Source of the DNA: Octopus bimaculoides
Lineage: Eukaryota
NCBI RefSeq assembly: GCF_001194135.2
Contig: NC_068982.1
Span: 115,571,512 to 115,635,511 of the forward strand
Reading direction: 5' to 3'
Length of the DNA: 64,000 nt
Every line of letters begins with the position of its first letter. Within the stretch, counting starts at the first letter, position 1. Shown piece by piece: positions 30,601-33,600 of the stretch. Made by a program: the position numbers and the translations under genes. Under the pieces are notes generated by a model. That model ran no database searches. It worked only from the letters and a program-made list of their open reading frames with translations, and was not told the origin of the DNA.

Positions 30601-33600
30601 CAACTCACAACAAATTGTCTCTTACCCCATCAGCTTAACCTTCCTTTATTGAAGTCTCAAATATTTGTAATTGATTAAATTGAGTCGGTATATTTATAAA
30701 TTTTCTTTGTTGTCCTTTTCAGATGGAAGAAACTTTTGGATGATTCCGAATCCCGTAAACAAAGATTGTTGAAACTCCAAGAGCAGTACCGCAAAATTGA
30801 AGACCTCTACCTTAATTTCGCTAAGAAGGCTTCAGCTTTTAACAGTTGGTTTGAGAATGCTGAAGAAGATCTCACTGATCCTGTCAGGTGTAATTCAGTA
30901 GAAGAAATTAAGGTAAATATAACTAGCCAGATTTTCTACCTGTTATGATTGATATGAGAATAATTTAATATTATCTTTAAACTTGGGTTTATTAGTGCTG
31001 TAAAATTCATTTAGTTGTATGGTAATGTGTATTTCTATGTTTGACAAATTGCTATTTGTGTAGGCGTTGAGGGAAGCCCATGACCAATTCAAGGCATCAT
31101 TAAGTGCTGCTCAGGCTGATTTTAACCAACTTGCCAGTCTGGACAAACAAATAAAAAGTTTTAATGTTGGCCCTAACCCTTATACATGGTTCAACATGGA
31201 TGCGTTGGAAGACACTTGGAGAAACCTACAGAAAATCATTAAGGTACAGTATTTCTAGTCACATATTTTTTTTTTGTTTTATGGTGTATAGACCTCATTG
31301 TCTTTAAGTGCTGTCTGATGTTCATCAATTTTGTTTCACACCATCACATATATTTATCAAATTCATTGTTCTATAACTTGTTTACAGGAACGTGATGGTG
31401 AACTAAACCGAGAACAACAGAGACAAGAAGAGAATGATCAACTTCGTAAACAATTTGCTCAAGCTGCTAATGCTTTCCATTCTTGGCTGACTGAGACAAG
31501 GTCTGTATTTAACTGCTGCTGAATAATAATTCCACTTCTATATTACACACACCTTCAGCTGAATTTATGTTAGAGATTTCTTTATCAAAGATATTAAATC
31601 TATCTTACTAAGAAGTGCAGTATATTTTTGTGTTCATTAAAACGTTCCAGATTATTTCTTTAGCAATTATTGTCCAGTAAACTTTATGTAGGAAAATTTT
31701 ATTGGAAGTTAATTCAGATATGGAGTATTGTTTTCACGTAGTTAATGTTTAAATGATTTAATGTTTTGATGTTTGCTGTTTAATTGACATATTTTTTTAA
31801 TCTTTTCTCTTTTCTACAACTTTTGTTTTCTATTGTACCTGGTCCTTCTACTCTACTATTTGCTGTGAATTCAGACTCTGGCTTTTGGATGGGTTATTAC
31901 AGTTTTTTTCCTTCTTAGCATGATGCCTCATTTGGCCCACTGATAAGACAGATCAGTGTGTTTATTTGCCTACTTAGTCCTGAGGATGGTGCTTACCCTA
32001 ACATGTTGCAATGCCTCTTTAATACCTTATCTTACATTAGGTCCTATTTAAATTTCTTGAGGTATGTTAGCAACTAATCCAGTAATTCATGTTTTGGTTC
32101 CCTCAAATTAATCTAGTACACATTGTTAATAAAAACAAGCATGAAGTATATTATTAACATAACATCTCCATCTAAATCCCCAGAAGCAGTTGCTTGAAGC
32201 TGAAACTTAGGTTGAAGTATTCATAACTGACCATTTTTATCATTGTGTGCATTTAGATTTAGTTTAACAACAATAAAATAATCAACTTACAGATGTAAAA
32301 ATTAATCAGCTAATTATCATTTAATTGCTCATACCCCTACTAAATGACTGACATCACTTCAAAATGAAATTTTAACAAATGAAACTTTTTAGACATTTAA
32401 TCTGTCTGAAATATTTGGAAGGAAGGCTGTTTATTTAGAAGTGGTTTGGTAAGGGATTGTGTTTGGTAGTGTTGGTGGAGCAGTTGGGGGGAAGAACCAA
32501 ATTCTTAATTAGCTAACAATGCATTGAAATATTAAAGATCTTTAAAGTATTTGAGATATTGTTCGGAGATAAAATATGTAAGATGAGTACATGTGCGTGC
32601 ATGTGTGCTTGTATGTGTGTCTGAGAATATACTTTCATTACTGGTCACTAACACTGAATCATCTTTTTGTTTTCTATTAATGATTGGTTTAATATTACAA
32701 ATTGTATTATAAAAAATTAATAAATGGTCTTGAATCCTTTACTTCGAATTGTAATGGCATATTTCATTCTCCCTCTTTCCTTGCATCTTCATGATTCATT
32801 CTATTTTCTGAAGTATTTGGTCTCTATAAAAGTAGATACATTTCATTGAATTTCTTATCCAACAAGTCATTGGGTCTTATCCAACAATTCATTTGATATA
32901 TTGGTTATTTGTTAGCCAATATATTTATTCGTTTGTTCCTAAAACCTAAATTTACTGCTAGATTCTTTTCCTTCCCTGGAACCACCTGATTTATACTAAC
33001 CCAGCCTATTATGAGTTACTACTAAGTGTTATGCCTTTTAACAATAATGGTTTAGATTTGTTTTTCCAAAAGCATGACAAGTAGCTTTAAGAAATGAAAC
33101 AGTTTGCCTGGAATTCTAATGAACTTGCTGATCTTAAGCATGTATTAAAAAAAAATTTTGTATTGTGAAATATTTCATAAAGTTTTAGTAAAAAAGTAAG
33201 TTAAATCAGTATTTAAAGTAAATATTTATTGTACACTTTTATACATGTAAACGAAAACTGTTCTTCATAAATTGGTTTTCACTACTTTATCGTCCTCCTT
33301 ATTTTTTTGCTTATTCTGAGATTCCCCTTATTAGGCTTGTGCCATTCTACATTGGCCTCTCTAAAGAATACAATTGAGAATATATTTATTGAAGTTATCA
33401 AAATGTCTTTCATCTATCAATTAATTTCTATTTCTTTACTATAGATTGTATTGGTTTCTAACATAAGCACAAGGCTATTTCTTATGTCAATTTTATTTCT
33501 ATCATAATCTATATCTATTTGTATATTTTTTCAAACAGAGCTGCTATGATGGAGGGCTCAGGAAGTCTTGAAGATCAGTTGGAAGCTGTTAAGGTGAGAA

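What the first reader, a model, noticed from the sequence alone, without database searches (positions are those of the whole stretch)
31800..31923. 18-nt microexon LWLLDG apparently homologous to vertebrate TYLLDG, with neural-microexon signals
Seen: A CTC TGG CTT TTG GAT GG (31875-31892) between cag and gt, phase 2-2, giving [17 protein letters not shown]. Upstream are a long pyrimidine tract and a TGC at -14 to -12; the surrounding 2-kb intron has no recognisable TE. Established: human SPTAN1 reads ETR-TYLLDG-SCMVEESG, the 6 aa are alternatively spliced, and SRRM4/eMIC-dependent neural microexons carry a UGC close to the acceptor. Inference: a microexon conserved since the bilaterian ancestor and likely missed by gene predictors. 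Read-through of its weak donor (gttatt) would add LLQFFSFLA-stop and remove the EF-hands.
Basis: partly seen in the sequence, partly recalled or inferred. Interest (0 to 1): 0.75.

Follow-up and report, generated by a model that had tools for sequence, protein, structure and literature searches.

The report
Ancient alpha-spectrin microexon, already annotated
The 18-base unit is a real, alternatively used microexon of the Octopus bimaculoides alpha-spectrin gene that shares its origin with the vertebrate SPTAN1 'TYLLDG' exon, but public gene annotation already lists it for this genome and for many other animals.

Summary
The sequence observation is correct. Window 31875-31892 (ACTCTGGCTTTTGGATGG, cag|...|gttatt, phase 2-2) encodes LWLLDG between ...WLTETR and AAMMEGSG. 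Chance would give about 1.4e-5 such units per intron.

The window is Octopus bimaculoides alpha-spectrin. RefSeq isoform X1 (XP_052834593.1) maps 100% onto it with unique GT-AG junctions and contains this exon. Isoforms X4 and X13 also have it; X3, X11, X12 and X14 skip it. So "missed by gene predictors" is wrong.

Shared origin with vertebrate TYLLDG is strongly supported: same intron, same phase, and the same ...GATGG|gtta exon end. Versions occur in:
- other molluscs: L/MWLLDG, with one or two extra Gly in some bivalves
- Lingula, myriapods, chelicerates and probable clitellate annelids
- insects, as a 24-nt form (YRLLGWDG)

Erythroid alpha-spectrin has AYFLDG, and alpha-actinin has a segment of similar length at this point.

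Structure models place the six residues as an extension of helix A of the last spectrin repeat.

Neural or SRRM4/eMIC control is untested. The upstream UGC is poorly conserved in position. A GCAUG (the Rbfox motif) sits 20-30 nt downstream in all four molluscs examined.

The read-through product is not conserved.

Verdict: real, ancient and already known; moderate-to-low interest.

The parts
31388..31500 (+). Constitutive exon C of alpha-spectrin ([38 protein letters not shown]). It ends AG|gt, phase 2.
   Evidence: Exact spliced mapping of RefSeq XP_052834593.1. The same exon end is seen in Haliotis, Mya, Dreissena, Thrips, Ridgeia and a vertebrate.
31793..31860 (+). Long pyrimidine-rich tract upstream of the microexon acceptor.
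   Evidence: The -80..-1 region is 74% pyrimidine, the highest of 37 acceptors in the gene portion.
31861..31863 (+). UGC trinucleotide at -14 to -12 from the acceptor. Candidate eMIC/SRRM-type element, unproven.
   Evidence: Orthologues have TGC at -24 (Haliotis), -29 (Dreissena), -54 (Mya) and -34/-31 (vertebrate). The position is not conserved.
31875..31892 (+). 18-nt alternative microexon ACTCTGGCTTTTGGATGG, encoding (R)LWLLDG. Phase 2 in, phase 2 out.
   Evidence: Included in O. bimaculoides RefSeq isoforms X1, X4 and X13; skipped in X3, X11, X12 and X14.
31893..31898 (+). Weak donor gttatt. With the exon end it forms GATGG|gtta, which is shared with Haliotis (gttatt), bivalves (gttaat) and the vertebrate (gttagt).
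   Evidence: weakest of 37 donors.
31918..31922 (+). GCAUG (core of the Rbfox binding motif) 26 nt downstream of the microexon. Candidate intronic splicing enhancer.
   Evidence: GCATG lies at +26, +20, +28 and +30 in Octopus, Haliotis, Mya and Dreissena. It lies within the only conserved island of the Mya versus Dreissena intron comparison (blastn E 2e-11).
33539..33593 (+). Constitutive exon D ([18 protein letters not shown]). Its first base A completes Arg when the microexon is skipped, or Gly when it is included.

Best explanation
This is an 18-nt cassette microexon of the Octopus bimaculoides alpha-spectrin gene. It is already annotated, and it shares its origin with the 18-nt TYLLDG exon of vertebrate SPTAN1. 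It was inherited from at least the bilaterian ancestor.

Shown:
- The exon is used in some annotated transcripts and skipped in others.
- Versions of it sit in the same intron and phase in molluscs, insects and vertebrates.
- The same residues form part of a larger constitutive exon in mites.

Shown by models: inclusion adds six residues (L-W-L-L-D-G) that lengthen helix A of the last spectrin repeat by about one and a half turns. The addition comes just before the Gly/Ser-rich A-B loop.

Inferred:
- That end of the repeat abuts the C-terminal EF-hand domain.
- The longer form is the ancestral geometry, because erythroid alpha-spectrin and alpha-actinin have a segment of comparable length there.
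- Skipping therefore shortens the helix. This probably tunes how the alpha-spectrin C-terminus packs against the EF-hand domain and the beta-spectrin N-terminus at the actin junction.
- Regulation: a very weak donor and a weak acceptor make the exon depend on enhancers. The best-conserved candidate is a GCAUG 20-30 nt downstream, which suggests Rbfox-type activation. The upstream pyrimidine tract and UGC may contribute.
For: - Identity and use of the exon: residues 967-2457 of XP_052834593.1 map 100% onto the window with unique GT-AG junctions and include the exon. Octopus isoforms exist with and without it. mRNA-sized Logan contigs of another cephalopod encode products of 2416 aa and 2410 aa (without).
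- Spread across animals: LWLLDG in cuttlefish, scallops, Sinanodonta, Haliotis, Scolopendra and Strigamia; MWLLDG in a scorpion and a spider; MWLLDGGG or MWLLDGG in Mya and Ruditapes; MWLLEG in an oyster and a mussel; YRLLGWDG in many insects. An intronless, cDNA-like contig L001 carries LWLLDG.
- Genomic microexons with the same phase are found in Mya, Dreissena, Haliotis, Thrips and a vertebrate. In mite-like genomes the residues are part of one long ORF.
- Chance expectation is 1.4e-5 per intron.
- Related proteins: SPTA1 in PDB 8iah reads [12 protein letters not shown]. Alpha-actinin-2 is only 2 residues shorter than the form with the exon and 4 longer than the skipped form.
- AlphaFold2: helix 108-171 with the exon against 108-165 without it, with the same EGSGS loop. 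The best structural matches are 8iah chain 8 and alpha-actinin-2.
- Regulation: the donor is the weakest of 37. GCATG is conserved at +20 to +30 in four molluscs, inside the only conserved intronic island between two bivalves.
Against: - No RNA-seq was available, so tissue pattern and inclusion level in octopus are unknown.
- The annotated isoforms are computational (Gnomon) models, although they are supported here by independent transcript-like contigs from related species.
- Model confidence at the insert is only moderate (pLDDT about 73), and most rows of the alignment lack the insert.
- The functional effect on EF-hand or beta-spectrin packing is inference only.
- The vertebrate contig has no GCAUG within 300 nt downstream, so Rbfox-type control, if real, may be specific to molluscs.
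- Several lophotrochozoan representatives lack the insert: Owenia, Helobdella, Lineus and Tubulanus. The Ridgeia intron has no such unit. Losses are therefore common.
Confidence: 0.85

Rival explanations
1. One reading: an SRRM4/eMIC-dependent, neuron-specific microexon. The UGC next to the acceptor would recruit the eMIC domain of Srrm234, so that the exon is included only in neurons.
For: - The exon is at most 27 nt long, with weak splice sites.
- It has the longest pyrimidine tract of the gene portion and a UGC at -14.
- Four of five orthologues have a TGC between -14 and -34.
- The eMIC domain dates to the bilaterian ancestor (PMC8797185).
Against: - UGC is a 3-mer that is fairly likely by chance in a 40-nt stretch. 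Its position is not conserved (-14 to -54).
- The only SRRM4-responsive SPTAN1 microexon I found in the papers is the 15-nt exon HsaEX0061551, a different exon.
- alpha-Spec/Sptan1 is not among the only four exons shared by the fly and mouse eMIC programmes.
- No expression data could be examined.
Confidence: 0.3
2. An Rbfox-activated cassette exon. Rbfox would bind the conserved GCAUG 20-30 nt downstream and promote use of the weak donor in neurons, muscle or both. This does not exclude the eMIC reading.
For: - GCATG lies at +26, +20, +28 and +30 in Octopus, Haliotis, Mya and Dreissena.
- It sits within the only significant conserved block of the bivalve intron (E 2e-11).
- A downstream (U)GCAUG acting as an Rbfox-dependent enhancer is established knowledge across animals.
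Against: - The base before the motif is A, not U, in all four molluscs (AGCAUG).
- There is no GCAUG within 300 nt downstream in the vertebrate contig.
- The conserved ...YAGCATGA block also looks like an acceptor site (pyrimidine run plus AG), so it could serve another role.
- Binding and tissue pattern were not tested.
Confidence: 0.45
3. Independent (convergent) origin of similar six-residue inserts in vertebrates and protostomes.
For: Microexon programmes turn over quickly. Most position-matched fly and mouse eMIC exons were judged convergent.
Against: - Intron position, phase and length class are identical, the x-aromatic-L-L-D-G core is shared, and the exon ends with the same nucleotides (GATGG|gtta) in Octopus, Haliotis and the vertebrate. 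Thrips shares GATGG|gt (gtgatt).
- The exon is present in molluscs, a brachiopod, myriapods, chelicerates, insects and vertebrates.
- SPTA1 has AYFLDG, and alpha-actinin has a segment of matching length.
Confidence: 0.03
4. A functional truncated isoform made by reading through the weak donor ([15 protein letters not shown]-stop), which would lack the EF-hands.
Against: - The read-through tails in Haliotis, Mya, Dreissena and the vertebrate differ in sequence and length. Only the residues forced by the gtta donor are shared.
- A stop this far from the last exon would normally trigger nonsense-mediated decay (general knowledge).
- None of the listed Octopus isoforms or the other full-length proteins examined ends there.
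Confidence: 0.03

Closest known systems
The vertebrate SPTAN1 (alphaII-spectrin) 18-nt alternative exon encoding TYLLDG, in the last spectrin repeat. This is the C-terminal heterogeneity mentioned in reviews PMC6521328 and PMC3249148. From my memory, and not verified here, it is 'insert 2' of Moon & McMahon 1990 and Cianci et al. 1999.
   Same: Same gene family, same intron, same phase (2-2), same 18-nt length, the same LLDG core and the same GATGG|gtta exon end. A long pyrimidine tract with UGC lies upstream in both.
   Different: The first two residues differ (LW versus TY). The vertebrate contig lacks the downstream GCAUG that is conserved in molluscs.
RefSeq isoforms of Octopus bimaculoides and O. 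sinensis spectrin alpha chain (for example XP_052834593.1, XP_052834597.1, XP_014784352.1).
   Same: This is the very same exon. The X1 protein maps 100% onto the window, LWLLDG included.
   Different: Nothing differs. This is the existing annotation of the feature.
The insect alpha-spectrin 24-nt alternative microexon encoding YRLLGWDG, YRILGWDG or FRLLGWDG (RefSeq isoforms of Tribolium, Periplaneta, Schistocerca, Halyomorpha, Thrips and others).
   Same: Same intron, same phase, the same ...GATGG|gt exon end, and alternative use.
   Different: It is 6 nt longer, and the core is LLGWDG rather than LLDG.
Erythroid alpha-spectrin SPTA1 (PDB 8iah) and spectrin repeat 4 of alpha-actinin (PDB 1hci, 4d1e).
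   Same: SPTA1 reads [12 protein letters not shown] at the same point. Alpha-actinin-2 has [13 protein letters not shown]..., a helix A of nearly the same length as the form with the exon.
   Different: Whether these residues form a separate cassette exon in SPTA1 or alpha-actinin was not examined here. The alpha-actinin sequence is only weakly similar.
SRRM4/eMIC-dependent neural microexons, for example the 15-nt SPTAN1 exon HsaEX0061551.
   Same: Small size, weak splice sites, and a UGC plus a long pyrimidine tract upstream.
   Different: Dependence on eMIC and neural specificity were not shown. The documented SRRM4 target in SPTAN1 is another exon.

Membership tests
Counterpart by descent of the vertebrate SPTAN1 18-nt (TYLLDG) exon | The host gene is alpha-spectrin. 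| tested here: met
   The window encodes the SH3 domain, spectrin repeats and EF-hands. It matches O. bimaculoides spectrin alpha chain X1 at 100%.
Counterpart by descent of the vertebrate SPTAN1 18-nt (TYLLDG) exon | Same intron position and the same phase on both sides. | tested here: met
   Exon C ends ...ET-AG|gt and exon D starts with a purine in Octopus, Haliotis, Mya, Dreissena, Thrips and the vertebrate. The vertebrate exon is cag|GACTTACCTGCTAGATGG|gttagt.
Counterpart by descent of the vertebrate SPTAN1 18-nt (TYLLDG) exon | Sequence similarity beyond chance. | tested here: met
   The x-aromatic-LLDG core is shared. The expectation is 1.4e-5 per intron. Intermediate forms occur across phyla.
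Counterpart by descent of the vertebrate SPTAN1 18-nt (TYLLDG) exon | Alternative inclusion, that is a cassette rather than a constitutive exon. | tested here: met
   RefSeq isoforms with and without it exist in two Octopus species. Logan mRNA-sized contigs encode products of 2416 and 2410 aa. This is evidence at the level of annotation and assembly, not read counts.
SRRM4/eMIC-dependent neural microexon | Length of 3-27 nt. | tested here: met
   18 nt.
SRRM4/eMIC-dependent neural microexon | UGC motif close upstream of the acceptor, downstream of a long pyrimidine tract. | tested here: inconclusive
   It is present at -14 in Octopus. In orthologues it lies at -24, -29, -54 and -34/-31. A 3-mer has low information content.
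SRRM4/eMIC-dependent neural microexon | Neural-specific inclusion. | not testable with these tools
   No RNA-seq read data were available.
SRRM4/eMIC-dependent neural microexon | Loss of inclusion when the eMIC domain or SRRM4 is removed. | not testable with these tools
   This needs an experiment. In the literature, alpha-Spec is not among the shared fly and mouse eMIC exons, and the SRRM4-responsive SPTAN1 exon is the 15-nt one.
Rbfox-enhanced cassette exon | (U)GCAUG within about 100 nt downstream, conserved between species. | tested here: met
   GCATG lies at +26, +20, +28 and +30 in four molluscs, inside a conserved block. It is preceded by A rather than U in all four molluscs.
Rbfox-enhanced cassette exon | Rbfox binding, and dependence of inclusion on Rbfox. 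| not testable with these tools
   This needs CLIP, knock-down or a minigene.

The most novel reading that the evidence does not exclude
This may be one of the very few microexons whose alternative use, and not merely its sequence, has been kept since the bilaterian ancestor. It would work as a two-state switch in helix A of the last alpha-spectrin repeat, set by neuron- or muscle-specific factors (Rbfox through the conserved downstream GCAUG, possibly together with eMIC). The switch would tune the geometry of the alpha-spectrin EF-hand domain and beta-spectrin actin-binding junction in excitable cells of molluscs, arthropods and vertebrates alike.
Probability: 0.3. Interest if true: 0.6.

Novelty: already known. 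Interest (0 to 1): 0.3.

Why it matters
Published comparisons conclude that the fly and mammalian neural microexon programmes were almost wholly rewired, with only four position-matched exons (PMC8797185). A cassette microexon that keeps its position, phase, core peptide and even its donor sequence from octopus to vertebrates is therefore an unusual fixed point.

It could serve two purposes:
- as a clean comparative model for how very weak microexons are recognised
- as a probe of what the last spectrin repeat does next to the EF-hand domain at the actin junction

The exon itself is no discovery, however. It is annotated for this genome, and its vertebrate counterpart is described.
- the breadth of its spread across animals
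- variation in length among bivalves and insects
- loss in some annelids
- fusion into a larger exon in mites
- a GCAUG conserved downstream across molluscs

Tried and rejected
- Homologue searches by length. The first two searches returned only proteins up to about 1.75 times the query length. They therefore gave fragments and single-exon ORFs without names. This was solved by assembling a 1453-aa product from the window and searching with that.
- Look-ups that failed. No gene was on record for the cuttlefish (P0242) or scallop (P0247) proteins. No second cephalopod intron could be compared.
- Literature. 'spectrin + microexon + bilaterian' and 'neural microexons + eMIC + octopus' gave no papers. 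The zebrafish sptan1 microexon paper and its supplements do not say which exon was deleted. I found no open text giving the exact words for the six-residue insert.
- Chance statistics. A Markov-shuffle simulation timed out and was replaced by an analytic estimate.
- Nucleotide conservation. blastn of the octopus intron against the bivalve introns found the microexon only as a weak 23-nt hit (E 0.2). Conservation at nucleotide level between cephalopod and bivalves is confined to the exon, the donor and the GCAUG.
- Rejected readings: a chance ORF; a transposable-element origin (no repeat elsewhere in the window); a conserved read-through isoform.
- Not used: the representative-protein search. 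It returns no names, and alpha-spectrins collapse into few clusters at 50% identity.
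Full report
**Observation.**
The window was read at 31300-33800. An exon ends at 31500 (...TGG CTG ACT GAG ACA AG|gtctgt). At 31875-31892 lies ACTCTGGCTTTTGGATGG, preceded by ttcag and followed by gttatt. The next exon starts at 33539 (A GCT GCT ATG ATG GAG GGC...). Inclusion gives [17 protein letters not shown] and skipping gives [11 protein letters not shown]; both stay in frame.

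TGC sits at 31861-31863 (-14 to -12), behind a long pyrimidine-rich stretch. Reading through the donor gives LLQFFSFLA-stop.

Only 7 AG-N18-GT units exist in the 2038-nt intron. Three have an open frame and one encodes x[WYF]LL[DE]G. From the base composition, the expectation is 1.4e-5 per intron.

**What the locus is.**
Stop-to-stop ORFs on the + strand give an SH3 exon, many spectrin-repeat exons and C-terminal EF-hands ending ...FTRSLFIN* at 38195. I assembled a 1453-aa product from the window. It hit 'spectrin alpha chain isoform X3 [Octopus bimaculoides]' at 97% as its best match, followed by cuttlefish and other molluscs.

Residues 967-2457 of RefSeq isoform X1 (XP_052834593.1) map onto the window at 100% identity. 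There are 38 exons, and every junction has a unique GT-AG solution. The window is therefore O. bimaculoides alpha-spectrin, from the SH3 domain to the stop codon.

**The microexon is already annotated and alternative.**
Isoform X1 contains LWLLDG as exon 31875-31892. Among the listed members of the protein cluster:
- O. bimaculoides X1, X4 and X13 carry it. X13 is XP_014784352.1, which also carries an older 'PREDICTED ... isoform X4' name.
- O. bimaculoides X3, X11, X12 and X14 lack it.
- O. sinensis X2, X4, X5, X8, X9 and X13 carry it; X11 and X12 lack it.

mRNA-sized Logan contigs (7.5-8.3 kb) of another cephalopod, about 95% identical, encode a 2416-aa product with LWLLDG and a 2410-aa product without it. 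The claim that gene predictors missed it is therefore wrong.

**Comparative evidence from proteins.**
- LWLLDG: Acanthosepion (one model with it, one without), Ylistrum, Mizuhopecten, Sinanodonta, Haliotis, Scolopendra and Strigamia.
- MWLLDG: the scorpion Hadrurus and the spider Nephila.
- MWLLDGGG: seven of the eleven listed Mya arenaria RefSeq isoforms (X2-X12).
- MWLLDGG: Ruditapes.
- MWLLEG: Saccostrea and Mytilus.
- MWLITG: Lottia.
- MWLLDP(Q): Lingula.
- An 8-residue YRLLGWDG, YRILGWDG or FRLLGWDG: some isoforms of Periplaneta, Anabrus, Schistocerca, Halyomorpha, Rhodnius, Chrysoperla, Tribolium, Tenebrio, Onthophagus and Thrips.

Unnamed transcripts that resemble the leech Helobdella in the flanking exon carry LWLLDG (P0296, P0298, P0299, P0001). 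P0001 sits on an intronless, cDNA-like contig. Vertebrate sequences read ETR-TYLLDG-SCMVEESG. Representatives of Owenia, Helobdella, Lineus and Tubulanus lack the insert.

**Comparative evidence from genomes.**
A microexon lies in the same intron in each of these species:

| Species | Locus and position | Exon and donor |
|---|---|---|
| Mya arenaria | L005 3555-3578 | GATGTGGCTTTTGGATGGAGGAGG, then gttaat |
| Dreissena polymorpha | L006 10698-10718 | GATGTGGCTGTTAGACGGAGG, then gttaat |
| Haliotis asinina | L009 39948-39965 | ACTGTGGCTTCTTGATGG, then gttatt |
| Thrips palmi | L010, 24 nt | ATTTCGCCTCCTTGGCTGGGATGG, then gtgatt |
| a vertebrate contig | L008 8985-9002 | GACTTACCTGCTAGATGG, then gttagt |

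In all of them exon C ends ...ET-AG|gt and exon D begins with a purine, so position and phase are identical. The exon end GATGG|gtta is shared by octopus, abalone and the vertebrate. Bivalves have added one or two GGA (Gly) codons before the same donor.

In two compact, mite-like genomes MWLLDG lies inside a single long ORF with no flanking introns, so it is constitutive there (L002, whose protein is 92% identical to Oppiella nova, and L004). The 530-nt intron of the annelid Ridgeia has no such unit.

Presence in Lophotrochozoa, Ecdysozoa and vertebrates, with these shared details, makes common descent from at least the bilaterian ancestor far more likely than convergence.

**An older root for the residues.**
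Searching the sequences of solved structures shows that erythroid alpha-spectrin in PDB 8iah reads ...[27 protein letters not shown]. Alpha-actinin-2 aligns as [23 protein letters not shown]. Alpha-actinin is thus only two residues shorter than the form with the exon, and four longer than the skipped form. The longer form therefore looks like the ancestral length of this helix, and skipping looks like the derived state. This is inference from the alignment.

**Structure.**
AlphaFold2 models of the last two repeats plus the EF-hand domain were built with a 64-sequence alignment:
- With the exon, one helix runs through residues 108-171 and is followed by the loop EGSGS (mean pLDDT 86; about 73 at the insert).
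- Without the exon, the helix runs 108-165 and is followed by the same loop (pLDDT 86-93 at the site).

The six residues thus extend helix A of the last repeat by about one and a half turns. The best structural matches are chain 8 of 8iah (the spectrin-actin junctional complex) and alpha-actinin-2.

In a spectrin repeat the A-B loop lies at the same end as the C-terminus of helix C. In the last repeat, that end leads into the EF-hand domain (general knowledge of the fold). I therefore infer that inclusion alters packing at the boundary between repeat and EF-hand domain, near the beta-spectrin N-terminus and actin. This was not tested.

**Splicing signals.**
I scored each splice site with a leave-one-out PWM built from this gene's own sites. 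The donor TGG|gttatt scores -1.3 bits and is the weakest of 37; the next weakest scores 3.7. The acceptor is the third weakest of 37. The 80 nt upstream are the most pyrimidine-rich of all (74%).

TGC occurs at -14 in Octopus, -24 in Haliotis, -29 in Dreissena, -54 in Mya and -34/-31 in the vertebrate. This is suggestive but carries little information.

A stronger signal lies downstream. GCATG is found at +26 (31918-31922), +20, +28 and +30 in Octopus, Haliotis, Mya and Dreissena, and never within 300 nt upstream. In the comparison of the Mya and Dreissena introns, the only significant block is 96 nt covering the microexon, the donor and TTTTCAGCATGA..TTGCATCC (E 2e-11). GCAUG is the core of the Rbfox site, and a downstream site promotes inclusion (established knowledge). 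The vertebrate contig has no GCATG within 300 nt.

**The neural/eMIC claim.**
No read data could be examined. In the papers I could search:
- The SRRM4-responsive SPTAN1 microexon is a 15-nt exon, HsaEX0061551 (PMC7935315), not this one.
- The only exons shared by the fly and mouse eMIC programmes are in spg, EndoB, unc-13 and unc-104 (PMC8797185).
- Reviews confirm three alternative splicing events in SPTAN1, including heterogeneity near the C-terminal calcium-binding region (PMC3249148, PMC6521328).

The neural/eMIC reading stays possible but unsupported. Rbfox-type control is at least as likely in molluscs.

**Read-through.**
The tails produced by reading through the donor are:
- Octopus: LLQFFSFLA*
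- Haliotis: LLLYFSACYRCCL*
- Mya: LISEIFYFQHDCIQFFETFEISCQI*
- Dreissena: LIFHFC*
- vertebrate: LVLNFISLKMW*

They share only what the gtta donor forces, so there is no sign of a conserved truncated protein.

**Verdict.**
Shared origin with the vertebrate exon and great age are well supported. The annotation-gap claim is refuted, and the regulatory claim is open. The feature is already known in public annotation.

Noticed in passing
window 18492-18527: A 36-nt cassette exon ([12 protein letters not shown]) between ...DPSNIQ and SKHQKHQ. It is used in O. bimaculoides X1, X3 and X4 and in O. sinensis X2, X4 and X8. It was absent from all 115 other full-length alpha-spectrins surveyed. From memory, the vertebrate 15-nt SRRM4-regulated SPTAN1 microexon lies at the same junction; I did not verify this.
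   Followed up: partly
window 8170-8235: A 66-nt acidic cassette exon ([22 protein letters not shown]) between ...LLERHQ and EHRTEIDA. It is present in RefSeq isoform X1. I did not compare it with other species.
   Followed up: no
L005 3555-3578; L006 10698-10718: Bivalve versions of the microexon are 24 nt (Mya, MWLLDGGG) and 21 nt (Dreissena, MWLLDGG). GGA codons have been added just before the conserved gttaat donor. The GenBank gene models fetched here lack the exon (the Mya fragment P0100; separate single-exon models across the Dreissena locus L006), although Mya RefSeq isoforms include it.
   Followed up: yes
L002 8357-8374; L004 10649-10666: In two compact, mite-like genomes MWLLDG is part of one long ORF with no flanking introns, so it is constitutive there. 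The annotated Oppiella nova protein (P0006) instead reads ETR-YVWPLAAEGKG-TSSMMEG at this point, which is probably a gene-model error.
   Followed up: partly
protein P0121: A 92-aa 'hypothetical protein, partial [Staphylococcus aureus]' matches the vertebrate alphaII-spectrin sequence P0003 over the stretch examined and includes TYLLDG. It is almost certainly vertebrate DNA contaminating a bacterial assembly.
   Followed up: no
window 33962-34544, 47219-48334 and 62241-62642: ORFs that look like mobile elements. One in the intron after exon D resembles a reverse transcriptase (...[18 protein letters not shown]...). One downstream of the gene resembles a hAT or GTF2IRD2-type transposase. One resembles a mariner-type transposase (...WFQQGGVTAHTA...). 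I judged these by eye only.
   Followed up: no
window 787-882, 11194-11203, 13807-14036, 27434-27506, 48906-49232, 50284-51099, 53823-54042, 56355-56364 and 61765-61977: Nine runs of N (assembly gaps). The one at 13807-14036 lies just after exon 13619-13722. No coding sequence of isoform X1 is lost.
   Followed up: partly
L007 5132-5661: The same intron in the tubeworm Ridgeia piscesae is only 530 nt and has no xWLLDG unit. Clitellate-like transcripts do carry LWLLDG, which implies loss within the annelids.
   Followed up: yes
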